Notes: generated by a model from the sequence alone, not told the origin. 64,000 nucleotides of DNA from Squalus acanthias (GCA_030390025.1 CM059430.1:74772001-74836000), one strand, 5' to 3'. Numbered from the stretch's first letter, positions 21,999 to 62,648 are shown. Numbers and translations: made by a program.

Positions 21999-22117
21999 TT
22001 ACTTGCAAAGGAGGCTAGCCTTAAAATGGTCGGCAACAAGGCATGATAGCAACAGAATTATTAAGAAACCAAATATAAACCTGGAAATCAAAGCAGCGCG
22101 AAGTCTGTAATCGGAAC
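21999..22117 (-). pseudogene. Gene A TM / short cytoplasmic exon GSDYRLRAALISRFIFGFLIILLLSCLVADHFKASLLCK*
   Basis: Phase-1 acceptor TATTACAG|GT and a hydrophobic segment of about 20 aa with an Arg near its N-terminal end. Aligns without gaps to the gene B TM exon (GSDY..LISR vs GTDH..LISG). An alternative donor AA|GTAAGG overlaps the stop codon. Confidence 0.75.
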
Positions 22118-24050
22118 CTGTAATATGCAAAATTATAGAATTTGAGTTATAAGGAGTGTTCTCTCGTAACATACTCAATAAATGACGCAAATGAAGATGT
22201 GGCCCAATTAATACTTCATTCCTACATTGGGTATTTAATGAGATGTGAACAACTTTGTACTATGGGGAAATAAACATTTTAGTTGCAGGCTTGGAGCCAT
22301 TTTAAACCGCATTATGCTTTCCTTTAAATGCTCAAATACTGAGGCAGGAAACACACGAACTTTATTCTACCTTGCCTGTTGGTTGTTTATAAATAGTTGA
22401 TCCAGTGGAAAACTAGTCACAGGAATTAATCTGAAATTGGTTAAAGAGTCCCTAATATGCCATCGATCGATATACTACTTACAGTAACAGTTTTGATTAG
22501 TTCCAAAAGCGATTTCTTCTTTAAAGTTACGGCGTCTTAGAGACCTAATCAATATCTGCGAATGTGCTTTATCTGGCAAAAACCGTAACATAGGCATTTA
22601 TTTCTCTTTTCTCCGTGTTTCAATAAAAACAAAGAGGAATGTTGTTGCCTAACCAGTTAGCTGTGTTGCTAAACTGTAACATTCCGATTTACTCTTTGTA
22701 ACATTCTACTTATTTAAGTGTAATATGTTACTGAACACAACCAAATGTTTCATACTCCTATCGATCGTCTATTATGTTTTATTTCTCTCATCATGATAAG
22801 TTCGTTGCTGCCGTGTAACACATTTACTTTCTCAATGAACCAAGGAAAGTTAAATGAGTATGACCTTTCCAGCATCGCACGCATCTCGAGAACAAATAAA
22901 ACGATCTTAGTTGATCGCCAAAAATAAATCTTCTAATAATATAAAACAATTAATTTTGTGCAAAAATATCGTCCAGTAATGAATTAGATTTCGTCAAATA
23001 GTATGTAATAATCACAAAAATATTTTAAAAATGTTTCAAAATTTGTTCGAGATCATAAGAATAAGCAATGAAGTTTTAGACAATAATTTTAAATGTGTTC
23101 TTATAACACGGCGTGACTCTGGGGAAAGTGCGGCATTTATCCCGAGGGATGTGTTTTGTTCCGGCTATTTGGGGCAACACACCGCACTCGCCCGCTATCA
23201 AAACGTTGCAAAAGAAAAAAACTTTACTTCCAAGCTTTGACTAATCCATTCAAACATTGAGCGATCAAACAACGGGGGATTGTATTAGCTTTCTTCAGAA
23301 ACACGGCTTATTTTGCCACTTTACATAATTAATACTGGCACAGAAATTCAGCGGCGGTTTTCCCAGTCCCCCGCCGTAAAGTCGACGGGAGCCGGCGCAA
23401 TTTGGAGAGCAATTGCTCAAATAGCCCTTTATGCCGTTTCTGAGAGGGTTTTGGGGGTCTTCGGCAGATGATCTAGAACGCCCCGCAGAATGACAGAGCC
23501 AGTCTTCTTTTATATCATTATATAGCAGATCAATTGAAATAAGATGGGACTTATGACTAAAGAGCACTAGAGCAAACAAATAAGGTTCCTAATGAGCTCG
23601 AAAGCAACAAAAGAAAGAATTGCGTTCAAAATGTCAATATCTGGTCTACCGGTTCAGTTGCAACGCGAAAGTAACTGATCTAGCGTAGATTTGGAACCAA
23701 AAGTGAGCTGAATTCATGAATTAAGGAAAATAAAAAAGTAATGGGGGGAATAAATTTGGCACTCAATTTAATTTATTTTATTTTATTTTACTGTAATCAA
23801 TCGGAGGAAAATTCATACGAGCTCAATCAAATGCATTATATATTACACGACAGATTAGGTGATGTATTCATTATGAGATAGAATGCACTATATCTTCCGA
23901 GTTTAGAAACCAGTAAATTAAATCATCTTTCAATTAATAGTGTTTCTAAAGGTATTTTAATAGTTGTGGCTGTGTCGTACATTAATGAACAAAATTAACT
24001 TTAAGTGTCAGCAGCAGCTCTTTCTATCCGTACAAATGTCAGGAAGTTAC

Positions 24051-24359
24051 CTGGGCTAGACCTGGCATTAAAGTAAATAGCCATGGCTGGATTCTGCAGT
24101 GTTAGATGAGACACCACACAGCTATATACAGCCCCGCTCAGGGCTGGATGTGGCGGTATCAAACAACTGGAAGCTTCATACATTCCCACCGAATTCAGCT
24201 TATTAATTGTGTTGATCCCAGTCACAATGTTCGTGTGATCTTTTTACCAAGTGAAGGTGAGAGATTCCGGGTAGAACGCCGTCGTTTTGCAGACGAGAGT
24301 CAGAGAAGATGATTTATCTTCAGCTATATTCGGCAAAATCCGTAACGGAGCTGGGGAAG
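24051..24359 (-). pseudogene. Gene A C1-set Ig domain exon with premature stop
   Basis: Acceptor TTCTATAG, donor CCAG|GTAACT. Encodes LVCKTTAFYPESLTFTW*KD...YEASS...YSCVVSHLTL, with the C1-set motifs CxxxxFYP, W and YxCxVxH. Confidence 0.9.
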
Positions 24360-25140
24360 CTATAGAACATGTTAGAGGGAAATAATTTGGTCTTTCTTTG
24401 TGCTTTAAAGATAGGATGCTATTATATTTTTGTTCCATGATTTTCAAATAGTGAGCATGACTTCAAACGCGCCAAATTGGATACAGACAGTGTTAGATGC
24501 GCCTTTGTGTAATCAGGACATAAAAAAATAACAAAATACGGAAGCATTTAAAAGTAATGCATATATGTAATAATTACCCATGCAAAGAAAAAAAGCAACA
24601 CAAATTGTTCAGGTTAAAAAAATAAAGTTGTGGATGCGGGAGCAGAGACTAAAGTAATGGTTTTTTTCCCTTCTCGTATTTTAGACATATTAGGAGGCAG
24701 TCTCTAAGACTGTTAAATAAATCTGTCTGAGATGTTTTTAAACGCGATGACTTTTATAAACTTGCACCAACATTTGAATTCCACGATGTTTGGTTGGGCC
24801 AAATACTCCAGGCAAATATAAACAAAACAACATTCCGTGTGTAACTATTACGAATTGCACTGTTGAAATTATTATTAGCATGCAATACAGTAAATGTCCG
24901 ACTTGACAATGCTAATAAGTATGCATAAAAGTAAAACACTGTAGTTAGTTCTCAAAGTATAACACACCGCTTTTTCGGGGTTTCTGTAGCTCTTCCGTCG
25001 AAGTTACGGCGGATTAACGCGAGATACCCCGCGGATATTCACCCTCATAATTTGCAATATATAAAACAATAATGATGTGTGATGGATAGAAGTGATTTGA
25101 ATTTGTCATGGAGATCAGCAATTTTACCTTTGTGACTCAC

Positions 25141-25458
25141 CATGAACAACAAGTCTCGACCCAGTTCCTTGTTCCATTCTATTTCCCTGCCGTCTCATTC
25201 CACAGTAATAGACCCCGGAGTCCTCGACACGAATCGATAGAAGCTCCAAATAGGAATTTCCTTCGTAAAAGATAAATTTCATTCCGCTGTTCGACCCCGA
25301 TTTAAGAAATGTATTTTCTCCCAGTCTCCACCAATAAACAGCCACGTCTGAATTATTTTTGAACGAGGGCAATGTGCAATTAAATGTAACGTTTGCACTA
25401 GCGATCACTTTCGTACTTGCAGGGGTTTGGGATACTTTGTACATTGCATCAGCACCAA
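25141..25458 (-). pseudogene. Gene A VJ-type Ig domain exon (open frame)
   Basis: Acceptor TTTCCGACAG, donor CATG|GTGAGT. Encodes VSQTP...VTFNC...VYWW...DSGVYYC...QGTGSRLVVH, with the canonical V-set Cys/Trp/DxGxYxC and a J-like GxGSxLxV. Confidence 0.92.
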
Positions 25459-25537
25459 CTGTCGGAAAGAAAAAAATTAAAGACCAGCGGCATATATCAT
25501 GGAGCACGGAAAATATAATAACATACACAAAATATAC

Positions 25538-25591
25538 CTGTGTAATGACCGACAGCAACGACACGTACTGAGCGACGGCTGTTAGGAACAT
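25538..25591 (-). pseudogene. Gene A leader (signal peptide) exon MFLTAVAQYVSLLSVITQ
   Basis: ATG at 25591, hydrophobic 18-mer, donor CAG|GTATAT. Homologous to the leaders of genes B and C but 1 nt shorter (ATT-ACACAG vs ATTTACACAG in gene C). Confidence 0.8.
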
Positions 25592-27919
25592 GTCGACCAA
25601 TATATGATGACCGCTGACAGGGAAAATAAGAGGGTTGCATTCAACTTGATGGAAACGTTGCAACGATGGAAAGAAGAGAGTGCTTGCTGTTATTTGGGTT
25701 TCGTAATCACAGTCATTTTCATTGGACCTGTAGATGGCGCCGAAAGCTAAATATGGTTTGGAGCCACGTCTTCACATCAGATGGCAGAGCAAAAGGATTT
25801 GTTCTCTCCCACACATATAGTGAAATAGTGGTACTGAATGATCATGTGTTATTGCATGACATCAGGTATCAAACTTACTTCATTAGCAATTACTGTTTAT
25901 TAATGACATATTTCACGATTGGTATGACAATGGCAAACCGACGCTTTTCTACACTTCTAAATGAAAATTGTATTTATTTTGATATTTGTAACTTAGGCCA
26001 CGTCGTTTCATCAGCCTCCATTCTATGAAAGAATACATGGAAAACTAACTTTTCCCTGTAGCTGGAATGACTGAGCATGCGATATCTAATTTGATAATAT
26101 TGATACTTGCTGAAATTCTGCACAAATAGCCGTTTACATCCTTCCCGATCTTCTGCGGAGAGACCATGAGAGTCCTCCTTCCGGCTAAATTTCCACGTAT
26201 GTAAGATTGTTTTTCTCGCTGTACCATGTGAACTCAGCCAATCGCAAAAAGCGTTCTCTATGGCAATACTTAAAGTCGGAGAAACATGCGGCTCTTTATC
26301 ACCTAGTCAGCACCAGCCATACATAAATAGGGACCATACCCAATCAGCTTCAACTCACTGACCAAGAGAGCTGTTGCCACTTCCTAAGGTATAATATTTT
26401 CTGGAAAATTATAGTTCAGGAATTGCGCTACTGTGAAGCTGGTGAATGCTGTCCCAGATCAGCAACCGACAATATTAAAGTCACCGGCCTGGACCACTGC
26501 CAAGGCGCACCAACACCTTGCGTGCAAAGAGTAAATGTAATCTCCCCGCAGAGAATTACTAAAAAACAGATGCACACAAAACAACGGCAAAAACGCCAAA
26601 TCGGTACCGAAACATGGAAAGACAACCTGATGAAACCAGCCTTTGAATTAGAAGCGCCTTTACCACAGTTCACAATATGGGTCACCTCAAGCGAAAAATA
26701 AGTCAGCGATGAAAAGGTTTTGTAACCTGAAACTGAATGTGTACAGAGGCCGTACCAACATGTGGAACAACGAGACGAACATGGTGCAATGTGAGAATTG
26801 TGAAATTAGAACACCTGCTGTCAACTGGAGGTGTCGGCATATTGGTTAACGTTTGTAGTGAGATGGTATTAATAATATTACGGAAAGCGAAAAATCTTTT
26901 CGAACACTCACAATCGGCACAAAAACAATTCTTTTTCTGATTTTACAAAATTGACAAAAAATAAAACAATATCACAATTCAGTCATCAAAATCATTCAAA
27001 TAGTGACAAAATAAATTAGCCTCCAGGACAGTGTCTCTATTCCTCAAACGTCTTCAAAACCTCAGTCCTGACCCGTGGTGCTAATCCCCGATCCTTCAAG
27101 GTTGAGTCCTCTCTTTCGGTTCTAGGCCATTTTATTTCGTGCTGGATACAGGGACGGGTTCCACCCGAGCACCAAAACATGGCGTCGGTCGCTAGTTTAA
27201 CACTATGCCCAGTCTCCAGTGTCAGGTTGCTTGCTGCCACTAAGTTAGAATCCCAGGTTCCGCGTGGATGTCCTATAACCGTGCTTTAAATCTGCTGCAG
27301 ACCGGCGTTGGCCGCCTCTGTCCCACGGAGAACCTGATGTACACCGCACGTGTTAGGACGAGAGATCAGGACCATTCTCGGTTTCATTTACAGCCTAGCT
27401 ATTTGTCGGCCGGTTTACAACATGGGCTGGGCAATGACCATTGTGTACAATGTTTTTTATTATTCTCGGTGACTTGATATAATTAGAAACACTGAAAGGG
27501 GGAGATGATTCTTCTTAACGATAAAGAAATTGTGATTTACCAATTCTCACAAATACGTGTGCCTTGAAACCTTTGGTCTAGATGAGCATGAAATGCCTAA
27601 TTCATTACAAACATCCTGCAACCTCAAATGGCTGCCCATAGATAATATTGTGAACAGCTTGACTTTGAGAATTTTAAGGCACACGAAAGATAACGAGTTA
27701 AAGTAGTCAGAATGTAAGTGCGTATTATTTATGTTGAAGTTGTTCTATAATAATAACAGAATGAACACTTGCATTCATACATTTAAGATTACAATTGTAT
27801 TAAGACAATGCTCCTAACTTTGGAAAATAAAATTCACTGTGTTCTGTTTTTAAAGCCTCTGAAGGTATTTTAGTTACTTCTATGTTTTAAAAGAGCAACT
27901 TGCATGACTGCACGTCTTG

Positions 27920-37451: not shown

Positions 37452-40400
37452 TCATAGAAACATAACAATAAAGATAGGAGCAGGAGTAGGCCATTCGGCC
37501 CTTCGAGCCTGCTCCGCCATTCGATGAGATCATGGCTGATCATACAAACTCAGTGCACTGTACCTGCCTTCTCCCCATATCCCTTGATACGTTTAGCTTT
37601 AAGAAATATATCTAACTCATTGTTGAATATATTTAATGACTTGGACTCAACTACCTTCTGTGGTAGAGAATTCCACAGGTTCACCACTCTCTGGGTGAAG
37701 AAATTCTTCCTCATTTCTGTCCTAAATGGCTTACCCGTTATCCTTAGATTATGAGCCCTGTTTCTGGACTCTCCGACCTTCGGGAATATTCTTCCTCCAT
37801 CTAGTTTGTCCAGACATGTCAGAATTTTATATGTTTCGATGAGATCCCCTCTCATTCTTCTATACTCCAACGAGTATAAGCCCAATCGATCCAATCTCTC
37901 CTCATATGTCATTCCTGCCATCCCAGGCATCAGCCTTGTGAATCTTCGCTGAACTCCTTCCATGGCAAGAACATCCTTCCAAAGATAAGGCGACCAAAAC
38001 TGCACATAGTACTCAAGGTGTGGTCTCACCAAGGCCCTGTACAACTGCAGCAGGACATACCTGTTCCTATACTCAAAACCTTTCGCTATGAAAGTCAACA
38101 TACCATTTGCCTTCTTTACCGCCTGCTGCACCTGCATGCTTACTTTCAGCGACTGGTGCACAAGGACACCCAGGTCTCGTTTCACTTCCCCTTCTCCCAA
38201 TCTAATGCCATTCAGATAATAGTCTGCCATTCTATTTTTGACATCAAAGTGGATAACCTCACACTTATCCACGTTATATTGCATCTTCCACGCTTCTGCC
38301 CACTCACCCAACCTGTCCAAATCATCCTGGAGTTTCTCGGCATCCTCCTCGCAGCACACACTCCCACCCAGCTTTGTGTCATCTGCAAACTTGGAGATGT
38401 AACATTTAGTTCCCTTATCTAGATCTTTAATGTATATTGTGAATAGCTGGGGTCCAAGGACCGATCCCTGCGGTACCCCACTATTCACTGCTTGCCACTC
38501 GGAAAAAGACCCATTCATTCCTACTCTCTGCTTTCTTTCCGCTAAACAATTCTCTATCCAAGTCAATACCTTTCCCCCAATTTCATGTGCCTTAACTTTA
38601 CACGCTAATCTCTTATGCGGGACCTTATCGAAAGCCTTTTGAAAGTCCAAATATACCACATCTACTGGTTCTCCCTTATCTATTTTCCCAGTTACATCCT
38701 CAAAAAATTCCAGCAGATTAGTCAAGCACGATTTACCTTTTGTAAATCCATGTTGACTTTGTCCGATCCTGTCACTGTTTTTCAAGTGCTCAGCTATTAC
38801 ATCCTTTATAATGGAGTCTAGCATTTTCCCTAATACTGAAGTCAGGCTTACAGGTCTGTAATTTCCCGCTTTCTCTCTACCACCCTTTTTGAATAGTGGG
38901 GTAACATTAGCTACGCTCCAATCCATGGGTGCAGTTCCAGATTCCATCGAATGTTGGAAGATGATCAGCAATGCATCTACTATTTCCAGGGCCACTTCCT
39001 TAAGTACACTAGGATGTAGATTATGAGGCACTGGGGATTTATCGGTCTTCAATCCAGTCAATTTCCCTAACACCATTTCCCTGCAAATACTGATTTCTTT
39101 CAGTTCCTCCCTTTCATCAGATGTATGTTCTCCAACATCTCTGGGAGTTTATTTGTGCCCTCCTTTGTAAAGACAGAACCAAAATATACATTTAATTGGC
39201 CTGCCATTTCTTTGTTCCCCATTATAACTTCCCCAGCTTCTGACTGCAAGGGACCTACACTTGATTTCACTAATCTTTTTCTCTTCACATATCTATAAAA
39301 GCTCTTACAGTCAGTTTTTATGTTCCCAGCATGCTTACTTTCATATTCTATTTTCCCCTTCTTAATTAATCACTTTGTCCTCCTTTGTTGAATCCTAAAC
39401 TGCTCCAAATCCTCAGGGCTACCGCTTTTTCTGGCCAATTTATATGCCCTCTCCTTGGATCTTATGCTATCCCTAATTTCCCTTGTTAGCCACGGTTGAG
39501 TCACACTTTTTGTGTTATTCTTATGCCACACTGGGAGGAACAAATTCTGTAGTTCATCCATGCAGACTTTGAATGTTTGCCATAGCCTATCCACCGTCAA
39601 CCCCTTGAGTGACATTCCCCAATCAATCCTACCCAATTCGCGCCTCATACCATCATAGTTTCCTTTATTTAAATTCAGGACCCTAGTTTCTGATTCAACT
39701 ACTTCACTCTCCATCCTAATGAAGAATTCTATCATATTATGATCACTCTGACCCAAGGGGCCTCGTACAACAAGATTGCTAATTAATCATTTCTCGTTAC
39801 ATAATACCCAGTCTAAGATGACCTGATCTCTGGTTGGTTCCTCGACATATTGTTCCAGAAAACCATCTCGTAAACATTCTAGGAATTCCTCCTCCACAGT
39901 ATTTTTACTAATTTGGTTACCCCAATCGATATGCAAATTAAAGTCACCCATGATGACTGCTGTGCCCTTACTGCATGCTTCTCTAATTTCCCTTTTAATG
40001 CCCTCCCCAACCTCCGTATTACTGTTTGGAGGTCTCTATACCACTTCCACTAACGTTTACTGCCCCTTGTTATTTCTCAGTTCTACCCATACAGATTCCG
40101 CATCATCAGAGCTAATATCCTTCCTTCAATTGTGTTAATCCCCTATTTAACCAGCAGTGCTACCCCACCTTCCTTTCTTTTTTGCCTATCTTTCCTAAAT
40201 ATTGAATAACTCTGGATGATGAGTTCCCAGCCTTGGCCACCCTGGAGCCATGTTTCTGTAACCCCAAACAAATCGTATTCATTTACCTCTATTTGCTCAG
40301 CTAATTCATCCACCTTGTTCCGAATGTTCCTTGCTTTAAGACACAAAGCCTTCAGGCTTGTTTTTTTAACGCTCTCAGACCTATATGAATTATTATTTAC

Positions 40401-41105
40401 TGTGACCATGTTTGATTTAAACCGTTGAGTTCTTTGCCTTCTACTTTTGTTTTTCTGCTTCCTGTCTTTAGCTTTTATCCTTGTTTCCCTTTCCTCTGTC
40501 TCCCTGCTCAGGTTCCCAACCCCCTGCCACTTTAGTTTAAACCCTCCGCAACAGCACTAGCAAACACCCCCTTGGACATCGGTCCTGGCCCTGCCCAGCT
40601 GCAGACCGTCCCGTTTGTACTGGTCCAACATTCCCCAGCTCCGGTTACAATGTCCAAGGATTTTGAATCCCTCCCCCTTGCACCATTCCTCGAGCCACGT
40701 ATTCATTTGAAATATCCTCCTATTTCTACTCTGACTAGCACGTGGCACTGGTAGCAATCCTGAGATTACTACCTTTGAGGTCCTCTTTTTTAATTTACCT
40801 CCTAACTCCCTATATTCTGCTTTTACGACCTCATCCCGTTTTTTACCTATATTGTTGATGCCTATGTGCACCAAGAAAACTGGCTGCACGTCCTCCCCCT
40901 CAAAAATGTTCTGTAGACGCTCCGAGACGTCCTTGACCCTTGCACCAGGGAGGCAACACACCATCCTGGAGTCTCTATTGCGTCCGCAGAAACGCCTATC
41001 TATTCCCCTTACAATTGAATCCCCTATCACTATTGGTCTTCCACACTTTTTCCTCCCAGCCTGTAGAGCAGAGTCACCCATGGTGCCAGGAAGTTGGCTG
41101 CTGCC
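37452..41105 (-). mobile_element. Best-preserved CR1 LINE in the window (ORF1 esterase, broken endonuclease, open RT)
   Basis: ORF1 VIGDSIVRG...VHIGINN (SGNH esterase-like); endonuclease fragments GVTETWL and GQSDHN; 508-aa open RT frame. Confidence 0.96.
37550..39076 (-). pseudogene. CR1 ORF2 reverse transcriptase domain (508-aa open frame, element-derived)
   Basis: NYRPVSLTS, QHGF, LDFQKAFDKVPH, GVPQGSVLGP, FADDTKL. The upstream endonuclease region is frameshifted, so the element is not autonomous. Confidence 0.93.
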
Positions 41106-41594: not shown

Positions 41595-41710
41595 CTTTTA
41601 AGCTGTCCTTTGAATTGCGCCGCTTCCAATAATGATTATCACCAGTAGGAATAACAGTACACTCCCTGTCTAGCCAGAAATTAATACGTAGTTGGCGATA
41701 TGGTCAGTGC
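41595..41710 (-). pseudogene. Gene B transmembrane exon GTDHIANYVLISG*TGSVLLFLLVIIIIG...
   Basis: Acceptor TCTTACAG, donor AAAG|GTAAAA, uncharged hydrophobic run. A shifted frame after the TM reads KRRNSKDSLK, which looks like a stop-transfer segment and suggests a 1-nt deletion. Confidence 0.75.
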
Positions 41711-42545: not shown

Positions 42546-42860
42546 CTCTGTAAGATTCAGTAAACTTGTGGATCACTATGGCTGGAGTCCGGAGAGAGAC
42601 ATGCGATACCAGACACGTATAAACAATCACGCCTCGGACTAGTTGTTGCTCTTGCACAAAGCTAGAAGCTTCATACTCCCACTCCTGTCTATTGCGCCGT
42701 TTGATGGTGTTAATGCCAGTTGTAGTTTCGATACCATTTTTATACCAAGTGACGGTGAGATCCTCCGGATAAAATCCTGCTGTTTTACACACGAGAGTCC
42801 GAGGTGCAGAATCATCTTTTCGACTTTCCACTGAGAGGATTTTTAATGGAGTCGGCGCGG
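42546..42860 (-). pseudogene. Gene B C1-set Ig domain exon (open frame)
   Basis: Acceptor TTTGCAG, donor AGAG|GTAAAC. Encodes AAPTPLKIL...LVCKTAGFYPEDLTVTWYKNG...YEASS...YTCLVSHVSLRTP. Confidence 0.92.
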
Positions 42861-43626: not shown

Positions 43627-43947
43627 CACATACGGTTAAATGTGAACCACTTCCATTGTCACTTCTTCTTCCCTGACGGATGACTGTGCAGTAATAGACC
43701 CCCGAATCCTTAAAACTCACATTCAGCAGTTGGAAAACGCCAGCTCCTTTATTTTGGAGAGATAATCGCTTTCTGTTATCTGGCTTTGTGTGCAGGTATT
43801 GCTTCTCACCATCTCTCCATCAATATACGTTTGCATGTGAGTTGTCCCGAGAGAAGGGAAATGTGCAATAGAAGCTGGCGTTCGAACCTCTGATCGCAAT
43901 CAACCTTAAGGGGGCTTGAGACACACTGAGCGAAGTATCGGTGTCTG
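43627..43947 (-). pseudogene. Gene B VJ-type Ig exon with stop codon (missed by the ORF track)
   Basis: Manual translation: ADTDTSLSVSQAPLRLIAIRGSNASFYCTFPFSRDNSHANVY*WRDGEKQYLHTKPDNRKRLSLQNKGAGVFQLLNVSFKDSGVYYCTVIRQGRRSDNGSGSHLTVC. Acceptor TAG|CAG (NAGNAG), donor G|GTAAGT. Confidence 0.9.
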
Positions 43948-44091: not shown

Positions 44092-44146
44092 CAGTGCAGA
44101 TAATCCGCAGCAGAAAGACGGACTGAAGCACAACAATCGCCAACAT
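44092..44146 (-). pseudogene. Gene B leader exon MLAIVVLQSVFLLRIICT
   Basis: ATG at 44146, 55 nt, consensus phase-1 donor G|GTAAGT. Confidence 0.85.
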
Positions 44147-44213
44147 TCTGAGAAAAATCTCAAATTGCTCAATGCTGCGCGCAACAATGAGATTGCTGCT
44201 TCGAAAGTAAGCC

Positions 44214-49434: not shown

Positions 49435-51755
49435 AATCATAGAATGAATACAGCACGGAAGAAGGCCATTCGACACGTCGAGCCCGTGCCGACTCTCAGC
49501 TAGACCAACTCCCCCGCCCTTTCCCCTTAGCCACGCATTACTTTTCCTTCAAATACTTATCCAACTCCCTTTTGAAATATGAGATTGAGTCTGCCTCCAC
49601 CACCCTGTCAGGCGGAGCATTCCAGATCTTAACCATTCGCTGCGTAAAAAAGTACTTTCTTACGTCGCCTTTGCTCCGTTTGACAATCACCTTACTCTGT
49701 GTCTTCTAGTTCACGATCTTTCTGCTAATGGGAACAGTTTCCCTTTATCTACTCTGTCCAGACTTCTCATGAATTTGAAGACCACTACCAAATCTCCTCT
49801 CAATCTTCTCTGCTCCAAGGAGAACAACCCCAGCTTCTACAGTCTATCTACGTAACTGAAGTCCCTCATTCCTGGAATCATTCTCGTAAATCTTGTCTGC
49901 ACCTTCTCTAAGGCCTTCACATCCTTCGTAAAGTGTGGTGCCCAGAATTGAACACAGTACTCCATTTGGGGCAGAACCAGTGTTTTATACAGGTTCATCA
50001 TAATTGAAAAACACTTTTGTACTCTATATCTCAATTTATGAAGCCCAGGATTCCGTAAGCCACTTTAAGTGCTTTCTCAAACTGCCCTGCCACCTTCAAC
50101 GATTTGTGCTCACATGCCCCGAGATCTCTCTTTTCGTGCACCACTTTTAGGATTGTACCATTTAATTTATATGTCCTCTCCCCATTCTTTCAACCAAAAT
50201 GTATCACTTCAGATTTTTCTGCATAAAATTTCATCTGCCACATGTCTGCCCATTTCACCAGCCGGTCTATGTCTTCGTGACGTCTCTCACTCTCATCCTC
50301 ACTTTTCACTTCCAAGTTTTGTTTCATCTGCAAATTTTGAAATTGTGCCTTGTGCACTCACATCCAAGTCATTAATATATATCAGGAAAGGCAGTGGTCC
50401 TAGAACCGACCCCTGGGGAAAACCACTGTATACCTTCCTCCATTCCGAAAAAACAAACGCTCACCAATACTCTCTGTATTCTGTCACTAAGCCATTTACT
50501 TATCGATGCTGCCACTGCCCCATTTATTCCATGGGCTTCAGCTTTTCTGGCAATACTATTATGTGGCACTTTGTCGAACGCCTTTTGGAAATTCATGTGC
50601 ACTACGTTAACAGCATTAAACTCATTAACCCTCTCGTTACCACATCAAAATTCTCGAGAAAGTTGGTTAAACAGGATTTGCCTTTAACAAATCCGTGCTG
50701 ACTTTCTTTCATTAATCCACAACAATCCAAGTGACTGTCAATGTTGTGCCTGATAACTGTTTCGAAAAGCTTCTTCACTACCCAGGTTAAACTGAATGGC
50801 CTGTCTTTGCTGGGTTTATCTTTACAATCCTTATTGAACAATGGTGTAACTAATGCAATTCTCCAGTCTTCTGGCACAATACCTGTATCTATGTAGGATT
50901 GGAATATAATGGCCAGTACCTCCGCCATTTCCGCTCTCAGTTCCCTCAGCATCCGAGGATGCATCCCATCCGCTCCTGTTGATTTATCTAGTTTTAGTAC
51001 AGTCAACTTTCTAATACCGCTTCTTTATCAATTTATATCCTATCAAGTGTCTCCACTACCTCCTCCTTCATTATGTCTATGGCAGAACCGTCTTCCTTGG
51101 TGAAGACAAATGCAAAGTACTCGTTTAGTAATTCAGCCATACCCTCTGCCTCCATGCATAGATCTCCTTTTTGGTCCCTAATCGGCCTCAACTATCACTA
51201 TGTATATGCCTATAAAAGACATTTGGATAATCTTGTATGTTGGCTGCCATTCCATTGTTATACCCTCTCTTTGCCACTCTTATTTTCTTTTTCACTTCTC
51301 CTTTGACATGTCTATATATAGCCTGAATCTCAGATGTATTTCCAATCTGACATCTGTCATATCTATCATATGCGCTCTTTTTATGCTCAAACATATTCTC
51401 CATCTCTTTCGTCATCCAGGGAGCCCTGACTTTAGTTGCACTGCATTTCCACGTAATAGTACTGTACCTCAACTGTATCTGAACTATTTCCTCTTTAAAG
51501 GCAGCCCATTGTTCCGTTACAGATTTGCCTGCCGATCTTTGATTCCACTTTACCCGCCCCAGATCCGTTCTCATCCCACTGAAATTGGCATTACCCCAGT
51601 TAAATATTTTTACTCCAGAATGCTCCTTGTCCTTTTCCATAGCTAATCTAAACCTTATGATACTATGATTACTGTTCTCTAAATGTTAACCTACTGACAC
51701 TTGCTCCACTTAACCGACCACATTCCCCAGAACCAGACCGAGCACTGCCATTTCC
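49435..51755 (-). mobile_element. Decayed CR1 ORF2
   Basis: MEYCVQFWAPHF, NFQKAFDKVPH, QHGFVKGKSCLTN. Confidence 0.92.
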
Positions 51756-52019
51756 CTCACGCCAAACTCAAATGGATTGGAACCGCATAACCCGAAGATT
51801 CTCAAATATGTATCTGGGTTAAGTATCTAGATATCTAATATGCTGGTTGTTTGAGTTTAGTATCACAGTGGTTCTTTTTAAGCTTGAGTTAATAATCTAA
51901 TCTAAGCTTAGTTCGCGTTGAATTGTGAATAGGAAAATAGCAGCGTAGTTTATATCTAGTTAACAGCAATTAGATAAATAATCACCTCACATCTAAGTAG
52001 TTCATTTTAAGTTTCCATT

Positions 52020-55000
52020 TAGAATGGAGGGGCAACTACGACCCAATGCCTGTAATTTCTGCGCCAAGTGAAACTTCAGGACACTTCATGTGTCCCGGAA
52101 GCCTAGGTTTCGAGGAAATGTCTCCAACTGTTCGAACTCACGCTGAGGGTTTCTGATCTTGAGGGACAGATCTGTTCACTGCAGGGCATACAGGTGGCTG
52201 AATGTTTCCTAGATCGCAGGTTCCGCACAGACAGATAGAAGCCGGAGTATCAATATTTGTGGTCATCCGGAATGGGAGGAAGAGACAGGCAGTTCAGGAA
52301 TCCTCCGGGAGTGTGGCACACTCAAACCGATATTCAGCATTGATTACCGAAGAGATTGACTGCAGAGACAGGTACATCAAAGTGTAGGAATGCAGTAGTA
52401 ATTCTGGATTCGATAGTCCGGGGTACAGACAGTCTGTTCTCCTACCGTCGATGTGAACCCGTATGGTGCATTCCCTCCCTGGTGCCAGTATAAGGAACTT
52501 CACTGAGAGGGTACAGAAAATTATGTGTGGCAAGGAGAAGATCCATAAGTCGCGTTCGATGTTGGAACCAACGACATTGGAAGGAAAAGGTTTGAGGTCC
52601 TGCAGTGAGAGTTTAAGGATCTAGGCAGGAAGTTAAAACGCAGTAACTCAAAGGTGTAATCTCTGGATGACTCCCAGTGCCATTCCCTAGTGAGAGTAGA
52701 AATAGGAGGATATGATAAGTTAATATGTGGTTAGAGGCATGTTGTAGATTGGAGTGTTTCAGATTCCTGGGGCATTGGGGTCAGTTCTGTTGCAGTAGGG
52801 ACATGGGACATGTTCAAGATCGACGGGTTCCACCTGAACAGAGCTGGGACCAACAACCCTGCGGGCAAGTTAGCTCGTCCTTTGGGAGAGGGTTTATACT
52901 AATTCGACAGGGGGATGGGCGCAACAATGTATTATTAAAAAAATAAACTTTTTGCAAAGAGGACTCGGAGAGACAGTTAGAGTTAGAAATAATAAAGAAT
53001 TAGGTGGAATGACAGAAAATACAATTAGTTCTAAGTTAGTTTCGGAGTGCATGCATGCAAATGCACGAATTTTGCTAATAACGTTGGTAAGCTGCAATAT
53101 GATATAATGGCTATAACAGAGACCTGGCACAAAAATTAAGGACTGGATGCTTAATATTGTCGGGTACAAGGTATTCAGAAAGGATAGAGAAGGAAAAAAT
53201 GAGGAGCGCAAGTATTGATTAAGAAACATATGACAGATCTAGACAGAGAAAATTTCCTTGAGGGGTAAAAGACAGAATTTATTTGGTTGGAGTTTAGAAA
53301 CAGTAAGGGAGATATTGCGCTACTTTGTGTATTATATAGGCCACCAAATGGTCGGAAGGATTTAGCGGAACAGAATTGCAAATAAATTATGGAAAGCTGC
53401 AAGAACTGTATAGTAGTGATAATGGGAGACTTTAGATACCCGACATTGAATGGGCTTTTATTTTGTTAAGGGCAGAGAAGGGGAGCAATTTCTCAGGTGT
53501 GTTCAGGATAACTTTTTTGATCTGTATATTTCCTGCCCAATGAGGAATCTAATCCTGGGGAATGAATTGTGTCAAGTAGAGAATGTCACAGACGGGGAGC
53601 ATTTCTGGTTTATTTATTAAAGTATCGTAAGGTTTATAGAAGGACAAGAAGCAATTTAGAATACAACGGGAGGTGGGTTAATTTCAGAGAATTGAGGAGG
53701 AATCTGGACCAGGTAAATTGGAGTCAAAGATAGGCAGACATAATTGTAATTGAGCAATGGCTGACCTTTAAATTGGAGATAGTTCGGTTACATTCCCGGT
53801 ACATTCCCACAAGGGGAACAGGCAGGCTAACGTATCTCTGGATGACGAAGGAGTTAGCGAGTAGAATGAAGTAGAAAATATGGGCGTATGCCAGTTGTCA
53901 ACTTCAAAATGCAAGGGAGAATCAGGATGAATATAAAAAGTACAGAGGGAAATAAGAGGGGCCAAGAGGTTGTACGAGCTTAGATTGATTGCTCACATAA
54001 AAGGGAATCCAAAAGTCTCCCATATTATATCATAGTAACTGTAAAATGCTTGTCATCGGAGTTGTGGGGCCGATATAAGACTACTATGGGAATCTATTGG
54101 TGGAGACAGAAGGCATGGCAGAGGTACTAACTGTGTACTTTGCATTGGTGATAACCAAGGAAGAGGACTTTGCCAAAGCTACGGTAAACTAGGAGCTTGT
54201 CGGCATATGGGATACGATAAAAATAGATAAAGAGGAGGTACTACGAAGGCTGCTGGAAATGAAAGTAGATAACTCACCTGGTCAGCAGGGGATACAGCCT
54301 AGGTAGCTGAGGAAAATAAGGGAAAAACTTGTGGAGGTGCTGGCCACAATCTTTCAATCCTCCTTAGATACAATGGTAGTGCCAAAGGATTGCAAATGTT
54401 ACACCCTTATTTCAAAAAGGGGAGAACAATAAACCTGGCAAATACAGGACAGTCACTTTAACGTCGGCGAAGGGAAAGCTTTTAGAAACAATAATCCAAT
54501 GGAAATTAACATCCGCTTGGACACGCATGGACTAATAAAGTAGAGCCAGCTCAGTTTTGTTCACGGAAAATCGTGTTTAACTAAATTGTGTTTTTTGATG
54601 AGGGAACAGAGAGGGTAGATGAGGGCATTGCAGTTGATGTTGTGTCGATGGACTTTCAAAAGGCGTTTGCTTATGTACCATATATTAGGCTTCTTAGCAA
54701 AATTGAAACCCATTGGATAAAAGGGGCATTAGCAGCATGGATACAAAATTGCCTCAGGTATAGAAAACAGAGAATTATGATGAATGTCTGTTTTTCAGAC
54801 GAGACGGAGTTATACAGGGGAGTTCCACAAGGTTCAGTACTAAGATCACTGCTGTTTTTGATATACATTAATGAATTCAACTTTAGGGTACAGGGCACAA
54901 TGTCGAAATTTGCAGATGACACGAAACTTGGGAGTGTATTAAACAGTGAGGAAGGTAGTAATTAACTTAAATATGAAATAGTCAGGCTGGTGGAATGGGT

Positions 55001-55830
55001 GGACACAAGGCAGATGAAATTCAATGCAGAGATGTGCGAGATGATACATTTTGATAGGAAGCACGAGGAGAGACAATACATATTCAATAATAAAATGTTA
55101 AAGGGGGTGCAAGAAGAGATGGAAATGGGGGTGTTCATTCACAAATCTCTGAAGGTGGCAGATAGGGTATAAAAAAGCAGTTACTAAAGCATGTGCGTCC
55201 TAGGCTTTATAAATAGAGGCACAGACTGCAAAAGGTAGCAAGTTCTGCTAAAAGTATATACAACACTAGTTCTGCCCCAGCTGGAGTATTGTGTCTAATT
55301 CTGGGCACCACACTTTAGGAAGGACTTGAATGCTTGTGATAGCATACAGACGAGTTTTACTGGAATGGTTCCAGCCATGCAGAATTCCTGTTATGTTGAT
55401 AGATAGAGACGCTGGGGTTGTTCTCCTTGGAGCAGAGAAGGCTAACAGGAGATTTGATAGAGGTGTTTAAAATCATGAACTGATTAGATAAAGTAAATAA
55501 CGTGAAACGCGTTGCAATGGCTGAAGGATCGCTAATGGGAGGGCACATACATAATGTGATTAGCAAGAGAAGCAGAGGCGACATGAGGAAAAGCTTTTTT
55601 AAGCAACGAGGGGTAAAGATTTAGAATGCACTGCCTGATAGGGCGGTGGATACAGATTCAATCTTAGCCTTCAAAATGGAATGAGATACACACTTGAAGG
55701 AGAAAAAAATGCATTGATATTGGGAATGAGCGGGAAGTGGGCCGTACTCTATTGCTCTTCGAAACATTCTGAGCAGTCAATGGGCCAAATGGCCCCTTTC
55801 TGTGCTGTACTATTCCATCATTCTATGACA
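52020..55830 (+). mobile_element. Near full-length decayed CR1 (ORF1 to 3' tail)
   Basis: ORF1 zinc finger/esterase remnants, endonuclease remnants, DFQKAF...GVPQGSVL...FADDTKLG, TTCTATGA tail. Confidence 0.9.
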
Positions 55831-56479
55831 CGAAAAGCGTTGTATAAACACATTTTGTTCGTCTTAAATCAAATACAATGGTGGTTGAAGAAGAAAAAAG
55901 CTCATCATGTAGGAAAGCAATAGCACACTCGTCAATCCTGACGTAAAAACCTCTCAGTTATTCTGCACGACTTAGAACATAAAACCAATAATTCAAGAGG
56001 ACAAACCGCTGGGAATCTCCAAGCTGTCACATCCTGAAAAGCCACGGGCTCATCTAATTTGAATAGGATACCAAAATAGAACATTTACATGTCAGAGCAA
56101 TACATTTTGATCAGAACAGTGCGAAGAGGTGGACTTCGAAGAAAAAGTGTCAGGGACGAGACAGCCTGAAATTGTTCAGGAAGATGTATAAAATCCTATA
56201 GCAGTAATAGAAGAAGAACAGATGACTGTACCAGTGCTCCGATCAACAATTTTCCTTCAGGCAACATCAAAAAAAGCGAGTTTCTCGTAATCCTGATTGT
56301 TAGCCCAATTAATTTCACTGACCTTATCTGAGATGGATTGCATTGCCAACACCACCTGTTCAGCAGAAAGCAGGGTCTTCCCCAGTTCATGCATCAGGTC
56401 ACCGCTTTGGTCATTTTATCTGTTTAGTAGTCCCTTCAACTGCTTTCGCGTGACTTCATAACGTTCCCACATACTCTTT

Positions 56480-61220: not shown

Positions 61221-61369
61221 AAAATATGTAAAGATGGAACTGCACCTGAAGTTCGTGGTGCTTGTCAGTTTTGAAAAAGTGTAGCTTATTAAGAAGAAAC
61301 AGAACTGTTGTAATATCCACAAGTCCAGGAGAAGTGAACTAATGAAAAGGACATTAAACAAATTATGCG

Positions 61370-61712
61370 ATCCATTCTGTTTCTCTAAACTCAGCTTTTC
61401 TTTATTTACTTGGCCATTGCCACGCCCTTTTGCATTGCACCATCATCACTTTTGTTGTTTAAAGCCTTCCTGTTTTCCACCCTATTGCAGAACTTCCCTT
61501 TTGGTCATTTCTCCCACCCCACTTTTCCCTAAATCTGTACTTACTTAAAACCTGTTACATCTCCAAGTTTTTCCAGTTCTGATGAAAGGTCATCGACCGG
61601 AAACGTTAAATCTGTTTGTCTCTCCAAAGATGCTGCCTGACCTGCTGTGTATTTCCATCATTTTCTGTTTTTTGGTTCTAGATTTCCAGCATCAGCAGTA
61701 TTTTGCTTTTGA
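61370..61712 (+). mobile_element. Penelope-type terminal repeat fragment with a degenerate hammerhead motif (61575-61611)
   Basis: AGTT-CTGATGA-A-AGGTC(ATC)GACCG-GAA-ACGT-T-AAAT: intact core, single mismatches in stems I and II. Followed by GATGCTGCCTGACCTGCTG, a sequence I recall as a common elasmobranch repeat tail. Confidence 0.65.
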
Positions 61713-62148
61713 AGCTCTCTTGTTCCTTTTGACGTCAGTTTGCTCCTAGTCGCAAATGCTTCTCCTGATGCGACCTCCCCTTTATTTTGCCACAGCAAAT
61801 TAATTTCTGCAACAGCATCCAGTTTTCATCCTCATATTCAATTCCGCCCAAAAGCTGAACGGCTGTCAGCGGAAGCGCACTACTTAGTAAATAACTGTTT
61901 CTTATCCCGTAAATTATTTGGTTGAGCTGCGGAGATACTGGGTAGGCGGAGTGGAATACCCGATGCACCTCCGACCGAATGGGGCTTCGGCAAACTTCAC
62001 CCTACGCACTTCAATAAGCGCGTCATTTGACAGCTCCGATGCCTCCTTTTGATATTGCGTGTCATTTTATGACAGATTATGCACAAACCATTTTTTTTCA
62101 AATGACCGTGTTTATTCACAGAAAAGACGGCGATTTGTATTGTTCAAT

Positions 62149-62203
62149 ATGTCTGTGTGCGCTGTAGTTCTGGTCATATGGGTCCTCGGGATTATTTACA
62201 CAG
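62149..62203 (+). CDS. IgSF receptor gene C leader exon MSVCAVVLVIWVLGIIYT
   Basis: ATG at 62149, 55 nt, hydrophobic, phase-1 donor ACAG|GTATTT; homologous to the leaders of genes A and B. Confidence 0.88.
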
Positions 62204-62327
62204 GTATTTTCTGCTCTTTCTCTGTTTTTCTCTGCTCTCCCTCTCCTACTTTTTACATCCTGTTAATTGTATCTCCCTCATTCTTACTTCGAGTTGTCTT
62301 TAAAATTATCGTTTTGTTTCCTGACAG

Positions 62328-62648
62328 TTGATATTGACGCTCAGTTCCGAGTCTCCCAAGCTCCTGAAAGCAGGAGCTTGCTCTTGGGTTCAAACATCAC
62401 CTTCTATTGTACATTCCCCATTTTTCAAAATAACTCTGATGTGAGTGTTTATTGGTGGAAACTTGGCGAAAATAAATTTCTGCAAACAGCCTCCGACAAC
62501 AGGAAAACATTTATCCTTTTTAAGCAAGGGGGAGCCTCCTTTCATCTCCTGAATATCAGTGCGTGGGACTCTGGGGTCTATTACTGCGGAGTGAGAAACC
62601 TGGGAAGCAGGATTGTAAACGGAACAGGCTCAACAATCAAAGTCTCCG
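62328..62648 (+). CDS. IgSF receptor gene C VJ-type Ig exon (intact; remaining exons presumably beyond the window)
   Basis: Acceptor TTTCCTGACAG, donor CCG|GTGAGT. Encodes VSQAP...ITFYC...VYWW...DSGVYYC...NGTGSTIKVS, in frame with the leader and free of stops. Confidence 0.93.

What the first reader, a model, noticed from the sequence alone, without database searches (positions are those of the whole stretch)
21999..62648. Cluster of non-rearranging, antigen-receptor-like VJ-C1-TM genes
Seen: three paralogs with the same exon plan. The V and the J-like G strand ((N/Q)GxGSxL/IxV) sit in one uninterrupted germline exon with no RSS. In genes A and B a C1-set exon (CxxxxFYP, W, YxCxVxH) and a TM exon follow. 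Established: C1-set domains are mostly confined to Ig, TCR, MHC/B2M, tapasin, SIRP and B7H6-type proteins; NKp30 has a germline VJ domain but no C1; leader-VJ-C1-TM is the architecture of a rearranged TCR chain and of the proposed pre-RAG ancestral receptor. Inference: this is an expanded innate-like VJ-C1 receptor family of cartilaginous fish, possibly MHC-linked, that is uncharacterised or only auto-annotated as SIRP-like or NCR3-like.
Basis: partly seen in the sequence, partly recalled or inferred. Interest (0 to 1): 0.9.

Follow-up and report, generated by a model that had tools for sequence, protein, structure and literature searches.

The report
Shark VJ-C1 receptor genes, mostly pseudogenes
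This stretch holds three copies of a shark immune-receptor gene built like one chain of a T-cell receptor but needing no gene rearrangement; the two complete copies are broken, and the family they belong to is large, shared by sharks, rays and chimaeras, and named inconsistently in databases.

Summary
There are three V exons with a J-like strand in the same exon and no RSS. Genes A and B also have a C1-set exon and a TM exon, and all three have split leaders.

- Gene A has a leader exon 1 nt short and a TAA in C1. Both are present in DNA contigs from two studies.
- Gene B has a TGA at the core Trp of V and a TAG in the TM exon.
- Gene C has only leader and V inside the window.

The family is real and large. 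55 of the 150 best 50%-identity cluster representatives are V-C1(-TM) proteins. All 28 family clusters looked up come from cartilaginous fish. With, that makes 16 species, chimaera included. They carry at least eight different automatic names, most often SIRP-alpha-like.

Members have either ITIM/ITSM-like tails or an Arg...Asp/Glu-His TM with a short tail, so this is a paired-receptor design. By profile score the ectodomain lies about as near to Ig light chains as to SIRP-alpha.

MHC linkage is not supported, and no RNA evidence was obtained. First readers of this scan noted the same family elsewhere in this genome. I found no published description, but several key papers were not readable.

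The parts
25538..25591 (-). Gene A leader exon (MFLTAVAQYVSLLSVITQ). It has 54 nt, 1 nt shorter than in B and C, so it leaves phase 0 while the V exon needs phase 1.
   Evidence: DNA contigs of X1 and X2 cover it without gaps.
25141..25458 (-). Gene A V exon with a J-like strand (QGTGSRLVV). The reading frame is open, with an AG acceptor and a GT donor, phase 1-1.
   Evidence: (V-set 1.1e-10).
24051..24359 (-). Gene A C1-set exon with an in-frame TAA at 24246-24244, where paralogues have Tyr.
   Evidence: The stop is present in contigs of two studies.
21999..22117 (-). Gene A TM exon with the terminal stop (SDYRLRAALISRFIFGFLIILLLSCLVADHFKASLLCK*). It is the Arg...Asp-His type with a short tail.
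44092..44146 (-). Gene B leader exon (MLAIVVLQSVFLLRIICT), 55 nt, phase 1.
43627..43947 (-). Gene B V exon with a J-like strand (NGSGSHLTV). A TGA at 43822-43820 replaces the first Trp of YWW.
42546..42860 (-). Gene B C1-set exon, open reading frame.
   Evidence: (C1-set 7.6e-15).
41595..41710 (-). Gene B TM exon of the uncharged type (VLLFLLVIIIIG). It has a TAG at 41672-41670. A TAA at 41600-41598 could be the natural stop or a further lesion.
62149..62203 (+). Gene C leader exon (MSVCAVVLVIWVLGIIYT), 55 nt, phase 1.
62328..62648 (+). Gene C V exon with a J-like strand (NGTGSTIKV), intact. It is 81% identical to the V domain of horn shark P0001.
37550..41081 (-). Degenerate LINE (GDSL-esterase ORF1 plus reverse transcriptase) about 0.5 kb downstream of gene B's TM exon, on the same strand. 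It is context, not part of the genes.

Best explanation
The window is a decaying, LINE-rich stretch of a very large chromosomal array. The array encodes a family of germline (non-rearranging) V(J)-C1-TM immunoglobulin-superfamily receptors found in cartilaginous fish.

In the family, a split leader, one V exon that already contains the J-like G strand, one C1-set exon and a TM exon give a type I membrane protein. Its ectodomain looks like an Ig light chain or a single TCR chain.

Members come in two signalling designs.
- One has an uncharged TM plus a tail with repeated ITIM/ITSM-like tyrosine motifs. I infer that these inhibit through SHP-type phosphatases.
- The other has Arg near the outer end of the TM and Asp/Glu-His near the inner end, plus a short tail. 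I infer that these activate through an ITAM adaptor.

In this window:
- Gene A is of the Arg type and is a pseudogene (leader frameshift plus a nonsense codon in C1).
- Gene B is of the uncharged-TM type and is a pseudogene (nonsense codons in V and in the TM exon).
- Gene C has an intact leader and V, and has orthologues in other shark orders. It may be functional, but its remaining exons lie beyond the window.

Shown: the exon anatomy, the lesions, the family's size and taxonomic range, the domain types and the motif patterns. Inferred: signalling partners, ligand binding through the V domain, and expression.
For: Exons and lesions.

Gene A's TAA and the gap-free leader region are present in X1 record 7/8 and X2 record 13/16, which come from two studies.

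Family size and range:
- The V profile gave 132 hits at E <= 1e-10 among 1.84 billion representatives.
- 55 of the best 150 have one V followed by at least one C1.
- 28 of 30 clusters looked up are family members, all chondrichthyan, and within each species all share one contig length.
- A search with P0052 gave 23 of 23 hits from chondrichthyans.

Signalling designs:
- Tails with LTYAAL-type and TEYAQL-type motifs appear in many members.
- The Arg...Asp/Glu-His TM appears in P0001, P0007, P0077 and P0109, with Gln for Arg in P0147, and in gene A's TM exon.
- P0001 (Arg type) and P0003 (tail with LAYASL) are 69% identical over 214 ectodomain residues and unrelated after that.

Other support:
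- Gene C's V groups with P0001 and P0003 at 99% SH-aLRT.
- The AlphaFold model of P0007 has mean pLDDT 86.7 and shows V, C1 and a TM helix. The best Foldseek matches are Ig light chains.
Against: - No RNA evidence. The two presumed RNA runs (126 and 129 million letters, tissue unknown) gave only a repeat match of about 40 nt. They held next to none of gene A's words.
- Gene B's stops were not checked against reads.
- Gene A's C1 exon is 309 nt and phase 1-1. Homologues have V-TM forms without C1 (for example P0050 beside P0059). Skipping C1 could therefore bypass the TAA, although the leader frameshift would remain.
- The activating or inhibitory function and any adaptor pairing are inferred from motifs only.
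- That the family is restricted to cartilaginous fish rests on the best 150 representatives and on a word-limited search. Bony-vertebrate relatives such as SIRP or PRARP could be true co-orthologues.
Confidence: 0.8

Rival explanations
1. The family is the cartilaginous-fish counterpart (co-orthologue group) of the SIRP family. These would be SIRP-alpha-like inhibitory and SIRP-beta-like activating receptors that have one C1 domain instead of two. This rival concerns what the family should be called, not the anatomy.
For: - The SIRP-alpha ectodomain 2wng ranks 4th and SIRP-gamma 11th of 11,338 PDB sequences against the family profile.
- SIRP-alpha d1-d2 aligns colinearly at 69.2 bits. Its d3 gives 49.4 bits, the best isolated C1 score among the five chains printed.
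- The most frequent automatic name is SIRP-alpha-like.
- One skate member, P0052, has V-C1-C1.
- The alternating xTYAxL and TEYAxL tail motifs resemble the four-tyrosine SIRP-alpha tail. That tail is recalled, not checked here.
- SIRP is a published V plus C1 paired family (PMC2785349, passages read; PMC12975943, abstract only).
Against: - Ig lambda and kappa V-C stretches score higher (77.6 and 75.2 bits) than SIRP-alpha d1-d2.
- With the window's own domains, SIRP is absent from the best 60 rows for V and for C1. There Ig C-lambda and UrIg2 C3 lead.
- 54 of the 55 V-C1 representatives have a single C1.
- The charged TM residue is Arg with a distal Asp/Glu-His, not the Lys of SIRP-beta (the Lys is recalled).
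- ITIM plus ITSM tails occur in many unrelated receptor families.
- No synteny test was possible.
Confidence: 0.35
2. Genes A and B are functional. On this view the stops and the leader deletion are assembly errors or rare alleles, or they are bypassed by exon skipping or alternative starts.
For: - All splice sites are intact, and every exon keeps its length class and phase.
- Each nonsense codon is one base from the sense codon of the paralogues.
- In X2, short contigs of high depth read A at 24244, which gives TAT (Tyr) on the coding strand.
- V-TM forms without C1 exist among the homologues.
Against: - The long single-copy-depth contigs of both X1 and X2 carry the TAA and show no indel in the leader.
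- The Tyr-reading contigs are short, about four times deeper, and differ at further nearby sites, as expected of paralogues.
- Gene A has two independent lesions and gene B at least two.
- The only other phase-1 ATG upstream of A's donor encodes a non-hydrophobic peptide.
- A's and B's V domains have no relative above 52% identity among the tree's rows, whereas gene C reaches 81%.
Confidence: 0.07
3. These are germline-joined immunoglobulin light-chain clusters of the kind known in sharks.
For: - Foldseek's best matches for the family model are Ig light chains at 22-28% identity.
- Ig lambda V-C is the best two-domain profile match, at 77.6 bits.
- Several members are automatically named Ig lambda-1 light chain-like.
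- First-reader notes place related genes among germline-joined IgL arrays on other pieces of this genome (unchecked).
Against: - TM exons follow C1 in A and B, and TM segments and signalling tails occur throughout the family. Light chains have none.
- The window's V domains match antibody and TCR V domains only at E 1e-4 to 1e-6.
- The J-like motif is (N/Q)GxGS rather than FGxGT.
- The family forms its own set of 55 representatives.
Confidence: 0.02
4. These are members of the MHC-linked shark NCR3 (NKp30) family.
For: - NKp30 has a germline VJ domain with an NGT in the J-like strand, and an Arg in the TM (recalled).
- NKp30 V matches gene C's V weakly, at E 5e-3 to 8e-3.
- Gene A has an Arg-bearing TM and a short tail.
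Against: - A C1-set exon lies between V and TM. NKp30 has none.
- NKp30 ranks below TCR alpha V and many other V domains.
- A first-reader note places NKp30-like single-V genes in the MHC class III region on another piece of this genome (unchecked).
- The paper on shark NCR3 subtypes could not be read.
Confidence: 0.04

Closest known systems
SIRP family (SIRP-alpha, -beta, -gamma) of bony vertebrates
   Same: - A germline V domain with a J-like strand followed directly by C1-set domains, then a TM.
- Paired inhibitory (tyrosine-motif tail) and activating (charged TM, short tail) members.
- A colinear V-C1 match of 69.2 bits to the family profile.
- Discussed in print as a link to antigen-receptor precursors (PMC2785349, passages read).
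   Different: - One C1 domain instead of two in 54 of 55 representatives.
- A TM with Arg and a distal Asp/Glu-His rather than Lys (the Lys is recalled).
- The window's own V and C1 do not bring SIRP into the best 60 PDB rows.
- Orthology and CD47 binding were not tested.
Immunoglobulin light chains and single TCR chains
   Same: - A two-domain V-C1 ectodomain with a split leader.
- The best two-domain sequence match, Ig lambda at 77.6 bits, and the best Foldseek matches.
- TCR alpha V domains are the best whole-domain matches for the window's V profile, at about 2e-6.
   Different: - V and J are joined in the germline in one exon with no RSS.
- Compared with IgL, there is a TM exon and signalling tails.
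- The J motif is (N/Q)GxGS, not F/WGxG.
- There is no evidence of pairing with a second chain.
UrIg and UrIg2 of elasmobranchs (Flajnik et al. 2023, 2025)
   Same: - A non-rearranging VJ exon with a split leader, followed by C1-type domains.
- UrIg2 has a TM (PMC12227049, sections 4, 7 and 13 read).
- UrIg2 ranks 2nd in the PDB for both the family profile and gene B's C1, with E 2.7e-38 and 1.5e-15.
   Different: - UrIg has three C domains and is secreted. UrIg2 has nine or more C domains (PMC12227049, sections 4 and 7). Here there is a single C1.
- UrIg and UrIg2 are described as single genes, with no paired activating and inhibitory forms. Here there is a large multigene array.
- This family is also present in the chimaera Callorhinchus.
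Chicken PRARP genes (Fu et al. 2019)
   Same: [quoted passage not shown] PMC10751288 cites them as VJ genes.
   Different: Nothing could be compared. No PRARP sequence was available through the tools and the paper is not held.
NKp30 (NCR3)
   Same: A germline VJ domain and an activating TM with Arg (recalled). It gives a weak V match, E about 5e-3.
   Different: NKp30 has no C1 domain. It is MHC-linked in sharks (recalled, and a first-reader note), whereas this array lies on another piece.

Membership tests
SIRP family | N-terminal V-set domain with a J-like G strand encoded in the germline | tested here: met
   One uninterrupted exon runs from FR1 to the GxGS strand in A, B and C. Pfam V-set matches.
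SIRP family | Two membrane-proximal C1-set domains (V-C1-C1) | tested here: not met
   A and B have a single C1 exon between V and TM. 54 of 55 V-C1 representatives have one C1.
SIRP family | Paired members: an ITIM tail versus a charged TM with a short tail | tested here: met
   This holds at the motif level only. Tails with [SIVLT]xYxx[ILV] motifs and Arg...Asp/Glu-His TMs are both present. Signalling was not tested.
SIRP family | Closer in sequence to SIRP than to other V-C1 proteins | tested here: inconclusive
   SIRP-alpha d1-d2 scores 69.2 bits, against Ig lambda 77.6, kappa 75.2 and UrIg2 60.8. No tree with named comparators could be built.
SIRP family | Conserved synteny with the SIRP locus; CD47 binding | not testable with these tools
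There is no binding assay.
Rearranging or germline-joined Ig light chain | A V-J-C gene that ends after C (a secreted chain with no TM) | tested here: not met
   TM exons lie at 22117-21999 and 41710-41595. A TM helix is present in the family model.
Rearranging antigen receptors (Ig/TCR) | Separate V and J segments flanked by RSS | tested here: not met
   V and the J-like strand are contiguous in frame. No CACAGTG lies in or beside the V exons.
NCR3 / NKp30 | A single VJ domain joined to the TM without a C domain | tested here: not met
   C1-set exons are present, Pfam 7.6e-15 for B.
NCR3 / NKp30 | MHC linkage | tested here: inconclusive
   There is only indirect evidence against. The MHC notes shown are on other pieces, 8 of 65 shown. 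White shark members sit on a 193.5-Mb contig, while the white shark MHC is on chromosome 19 (PMC10751288, Fig. 2 legend). The contig could not be matched to a chromosome number.
UrIg / UrIg2 | VJ followed by three or more C1-type domains | tested here: not met
   There is a single C1 exon. UrIg2 has nine or more C domains (PMC12227049, section 7).
PRARP | Sequence relationship to chicken PRARPA/B | not testable with these tools
   No PRARP sequence was obtainable. The search for the name found only unrelated uses among the 10 of 106 papers listed.
C1-set Ig domain | (F/Y)(F/Y/H)P after Cys B, 13 residues between Cys B and Trp C, and xVxH after Cys F (criteria from PMC2785349) | tested here: met
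   A has CKTTAFYPESLTFTW and YSCVVSH. B has CKTAGFYPEDLTVTW and YTCLVSH. B's best PDB matches are Ig C-lambda, UrIg2 C3 and MHC II beta.

The most novel reading that the evidence does not exclude
The family is not a SIRP offshoot. It would be a surviving sister lineage of the rearranging antigen receptors: a germline VJ plus single C1 plus TM chain, the exact domain plan of a TCR or IgL chain. It is kept in all cartilaginous fish, including chimaeras. It is as close to Ig light chains as anything non-rearranging in the PDB. It would therefore be a second candidate, alongside UrIg2, for the kind of gene that the RAG transposon split. It would also show that such precursors already worked as paired activating and inhibitory innate receptors.
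Probability: 0.15. Interest if true: 0.8.

Novelty: new member of a known kind. Interest (0 to 1): 0.5.

Why it matters
Which non-rearranging VJ-C1 gene gave rise to immunoglobulins and T-cell receptors is an old open question. The current candidates are UrIg2, SIRP, PRARP and NKp30.

A family with the single-chain TCR/IgL domain plan is present as dozens of divergent lineages in sharks, rays and a chimaera, with opposite signalling modules on similar ectodomains. This gives comparative immunologists a testable group:
- trees with named comparators;
- synteny to the MHC, to the antigen-receptor complex, or to the SIRP region;
- the cell types that express it;
- adaptor and ligand partners.

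It also matters for annotation, because the same family carries at least eight unrelated automatic names.

For this window the practical message is more sober. Two of the three genes are dead, so this locus should not be used as the exemplar.

Tried and rejected
- **Word-indexed protein search with the window's own V.** I queried the 179-aa stop-to-stop ORF 25124-25663 (-), scoring residues 70-176. There were 19 candidates and none scored.
- **Search with the skate member P0052 to reach bony-vertebrate SIRP.** It returned only 23 chondrichthyan family members. As a result no named comparators (SIRP, TCR, IgL, NKp30, B7H6, tapasin, PRARP) were available as sequences. Only a within-family V tree was made (quick method, 69 rows, 108 columns, 25 of 65 inner branches unresolved). 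A C1 set of 74 rows was prepared in the same script but no tree was built from it.
- **ESM Atlas search on residues 24-232 of P0005.** It gave generic Ig clusters only.
- **Structure searches.** They do not discriminate. Foldseek lists Ig light chains. VIA-align wide ties B7-H6, Rst, PD-L2, Neph1 and butyrophilins at Z 15-16.4 for two domains. For single domains it gives HLA-DP beta-2 or Ig CL for C1, and VNAR, TCR V or CD79b for V.
- **Expression.** No listed holder of gene A is on record as RNA. The two presumed RNA runs gave nothing but a short repeat match.
- **Papers asked for and not held.** These were PMC6761025, the DOI of the shark NCR3 paper, PMC3709836 and PMC10530332. The statement that the family is undescribed rests only on the answered searches. 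In one search none of the 15 papers listed (of 565) held a SIRP term.
- **SIRP-specific tail.** I considered and dropped the idea that the tail motifs prove SIRP homology, because ITIM plus ITSM pairs are common to many receptor families.
- **Third word-indexed protein search.** It was left unused because no query available to me would have answered an open question.

Full report
**What is in the sequence**

The window has no N. A tblastn of the window's own V and C1 translations against the window finds three V exons and two C1 exons, and nothing else above noise. Fifteen family proteins from public databases hit the same places and no others, apart from reverse-transcriptase debris matched by a mis-modelled N-terminus of P0001.

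Exact exon borders were set by reading the splice sites.
- Gene A, minus strand: leader 25591-25538, V 25458-25141, C1 24359-24051, TM plus stop 22117-21999.
- Gene B, minus strand: leader 44146-44092, V 43947-43627, C1 42860-42546, TM 41710-41595.
- Gene C, plus strand: leader 62149-62203, V 62328-62648.

Every internal exon has an AG acceptor and a GT donor, and the Ig exons are phase 1-1. Pfam calls the V exons V-set (A 1.1e-10, C 8e-08) and B's C1 exon C1-set (7.6e-15).

The C1 exons meet the sequence criteria for C1-set domains given in PMC2785349 (passages read): FYP after the first Cys, exactly 13 residues between Cys and Trp, and xVSH after the second Cys.

In each V exon the frame runs straight from YYC through a short CDR3-like loop into (N/Q)GxGSx(L/I)xV and the donor. 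V and J are therefore joined in the germline. No RSS heptamer lies in or next to any V exon (9 in the window against 6.8 expected).

The three leaders share a conserved ATG and an ACACAG|GT-type donor. This is the split leader that PMC12227049 (section 7) calls canonical for antigen-receptor genes.

Gene A
- Its leader exon is 54 nt where B and C have 55. The hydrophobic signal peptide therefore leaves phase 0, while the V exon needs phase 1. The only other open phase-1 ATG upstream encodes a non-hydrophobic peptide.
- Its C1 exon has a TAA at 24246-24244, in TW*KD where B has TWYKN.

Gene B
- It has a TGA at 43822-43820 on the first Trp of YWW. That column is invariant in 46 aligned family members.
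- It has a TAG at 41672-41670 inside the TM exon, in ISG*TG where homologues read ISGCAG.
- A TAA at 41600-41598, three codons before the donor, could be a natural stop of a short-tailed form or a further lesion.

I laid contigs of two DNA runs from different studies on 21900-25800. X1 record 7 and X2 record 13 both span 23035-24366 at single-copy depth of about 16, with the window's letter at 24244. X1 record 8 and X2 record 16 cover the leader without gaps. In X2, two short contigs of much higher depth read A at 24244, which is TAT (Tyr) on the coding strand. They also differ at 24208 and 24232, so I take them for paralogous C1 exons elsewhere in the genome.

Gene A's lesions are therefore real in the DNA of at least two data sets, one of which may be the assembly's own source.

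Gene C's leader and V are intact. Its C1 is not in the window. A first-reader note puts it just beyond the edge (unchecked).

**The surroundings**

The intergenic DNA is LINE debris. A degenerate element with a GDSL-esterase ORF1 and a reverse transcriptase lies at 41081-37550, about 0.5 kb downstream of B's TM exon. Reverse-transcriptase fragments recur at 38241, 47959 and 58746.

**The family**

A profile of the two intact V exons was searched against 1.84 billion cluster representatives. It gave 569 hits at E <= 0.001, 132 at E <= 1e-10 and 9 at E <= 1e-30.

Of the best 150, 55 are proteins of at most 520 aa with one V followed by at least one C1. Most of these have a TM segment. 54 have one C1. 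One, the skate protein P0052, has two.

I looked up 30 clusters. 28 are family members and all are from cartilaginous fish. The other two, P0002 and P0006, are turtle multi-Ig proteins. A search with P0052 returned 23 proteins, all chondrichthyan.

Together these cover 16 species: Heterodontus, Mustelus, Heptranchias, Carcharodon, Scyliorhinus, Hemiscyllium, two Chiloscyllium, Pristiophorus, two Mobula, Amblyraja, Leucoraja, Hemitrygon, Hypanus and the chimaera Callorhinchus. Within each species the members looked up share one contig length, which implies one chromosome.

The names are automatic and inconsistent. SIRP-alpha-like is the most frequent. The others are SIRP-beta-1-like, Ig lambda-1 light chain-like, tapasin-related protein-like, NCR3 ligand 1-like, CD276 homolog, PD-L1-like and uncharacterized.

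In a within-family V tree, gene C groups with horn shark P0001 (81% identity) and Mustelus P0003 at 99% SH-aLRT. A and B have no relative above 52% identity (quick method, many unresolved forks).

**Two signalling designs**

Many members have an uncharged TM and a tail of 80-150 residues. The tail carries repeated xTYAxL-type motifs followed some 20 residues later by TVYAQT-type or TEYAxL-type motifs.

Others have a short tail and a TM with Arg near its outer end and Asp/Glu-His near its inner end. These are P0001, P0007, P0077 and P0109, plus P0147 with Gln for Arg. Gene A's TM exon (RFIFGFLIILLLSCLVADH) is of this second kind. Gene B's (VLLFLLVIIIIG) is of the first kind.

P0001 (Arg type) and P0003 (tailed type) are 69% identical over 214 ectodomain residues and unrelated after that. 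They come from different species, so this supports the paired-receptor reading but does not prove it.

That the tailed forms inhibit through SHP phosphatases, and that the Arg forms signal through an ITAM adaptor, is inference from motif analogy with SIRP, KIR/LILR and NKp30. The motif details of those families are recalled.

Some homologues are V-TM forms without C1 that have the same TM and tail as a V-C1 sibling, for example P0050 beside P0059, both from horn shark. The C1 exon can therefore be skipped or lost.

**Where the family sits among known families**

Sequence searches against the PDB gave the following.
- Gene B's C1 alone: Ig C-lambda inside chain 2rcj_C (6.9e-16), UrIg2 C3 (1.5e-15), then MHC class II beta (about 1e-11).
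- The window's V profile: only weak matches. The best whole-domain ones are TCR alpha V domains at about 2e-6. NKp30 is at about 5e-3 for gene C alone. SIRP is not in the best 60 rows.
- A 46-member family profile hit 11,338 sequences at E <= 1e-5, with SIRP-alpha ranked 4th and SIRP-gamma 11th.

Per aligned stretch of the family profile, the scores in bits are:

| Match | Bits |
|---|---|
| Ig lambda V-C | 77.6 |
| Ig kappa V-C | 75.2 |
| SIRP-alpha d1-d2 | 69.2 |
| UrIg2 part-V plus C1 | 60.8 |
| SIRP-alpha d3 | 49.4 |
| UrIg2 C3 | 40.2 |

An AlphaFold model of white shark P0007 (mean pLDDT 86.7) shows V, C1 and a TM helix. Foldseek's best matches are Ig light chains. An aligner run on cluster representatives ties extended V-C ectodomains such as B7-H6, PD-L2 and butyrophilins at Z 15-16.4.

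None of this discriminates. The family is a V-C1 lineage about equally near to Ig light chains and to SIRP. The trees with named comparators that could decide were not possible with the sequences I could obtain.

**Literature**

SIRP-alpha is a published germline V plus two C1 receptor, proposed as related to the antigen-receptor precursor (PMC2785349, passages read).

UrIg (VJ plus three C1, secreted, MHC-linked) and UrIg2 (VJ plus nine or more C1, with a TM, linked to the IgH/TCR-alpha-delta complex) are the current shark candidates (PMC12227049, sections 4, 7 and 13 read; PMC10751288, passages read). Neither paper's text that I read mentions a single-C1 TM family. A term search of PMC12227049 found no occurrence of SIRP or PRARP.

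Nine answered searches found no description of this family. Four key papers were not held, so prior description cannot be excluded.

**Linkage**

I could not test synteny. The indirect hints are against MHC linkage.
- The eight MHC notes shown, of 65 for this genome, are all on other pieces. They include one on NKp30-like single-V genes in the class III region.
- Notes on SIRP-like VJ-C1 genes lie on the window's own piece, from about 13.03 Mb before the window to 0.67 Mb beyond it.

These are unchecked AI notes and serve only as leads.

**Verdict**

The anatomy is real. The claim of a non-rearranging VJ-C1-TM family is right, and so is the guess about inconsistent automatic annotation. However, the two complete genes in this window are pseudogenes, MHC linkage is unsupported, expression is unshown, and the architecture has a published relative in SIRP.

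I file it as an uncharacterised member lineage of the known kind 'germline V(J)-C1 paired receptors'. The bolder reading, that it is a sister lineage of the rearranging receptors, remains open at about 15%.

Noticed in passing
window 37550-41081 (-): A degenerate LINE with a GDSL-like esterase ORF1 (Pfam 6.3e-08) and a reverse transcriptase (RVT_1, 6.5e-33). It is broken into at least four ORFs and lies about 0.5 kb downstream of gene B's TM exon, on the same strand. It may have separated B from any former tail exons.
   Followed up: partly
window 24208-24244, run X2: Short contigs at about four times single-copy depth match gene A's C1 exon at 90-95% and read Tyr where A has TAA. Near-identical C1 exons therefore exist elsewhere in the genome. 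Gene conversion among paralogues is conceivable.
   Followed up: no
proteins P0050 and P0059; also P0032 and P0027: Some homologues are V-TM forms without the C1 domain that have the same TM and tail as a V-C1 sibling. The 309-315 nt phase 1-1 C1 exon can be skipped in frame. A first-reader note reports a neighbouring gene with a decaying C1 between an intact V and TM. This hints at a V-C1-TM to V-TM (NKp30-like) transition.
   Followed up: partly
J-like strand of all three V exons (for example C near 62620-62640) and the family consensus GNGTGS: The position held by Phe or Trp in the antigen-receptor J motif is Asn or Gln here. In genes B and C and in the family consensus the motif forms an N-x-S/T glycosylation sequon (NGS in B, NGT in C and the consensus). 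Gene A has QGT and no sequon. A glycan there would bear on whether the V domains can pair as in antibodies.
   Followed up: no
protein P0001 (horn shark): The public gene model fuses about 125 residues of LINE reverse transcriptase to the N-terminus of a V-C1-TM receptor. This is a likely mis-annotation, and it produced the reverse-transcriptase hits across the window.
   Followed up: no
window 1-12000, 18001-20000 and 52001-56000: Blocks of strong GC and AT skew of alternating sign (for example -0.36 at 2001-4000 and +0.36 at 18001-20000). They probably reflect oriented repeat copies.
   Followed up: no
window 49843-50003 and 55243-55403: An inverted repeat of 161 nt, 75% complementary, with arms 5.2 kb apart inside reverse-transcriptase debris between genes B and C.
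   Followed up: no
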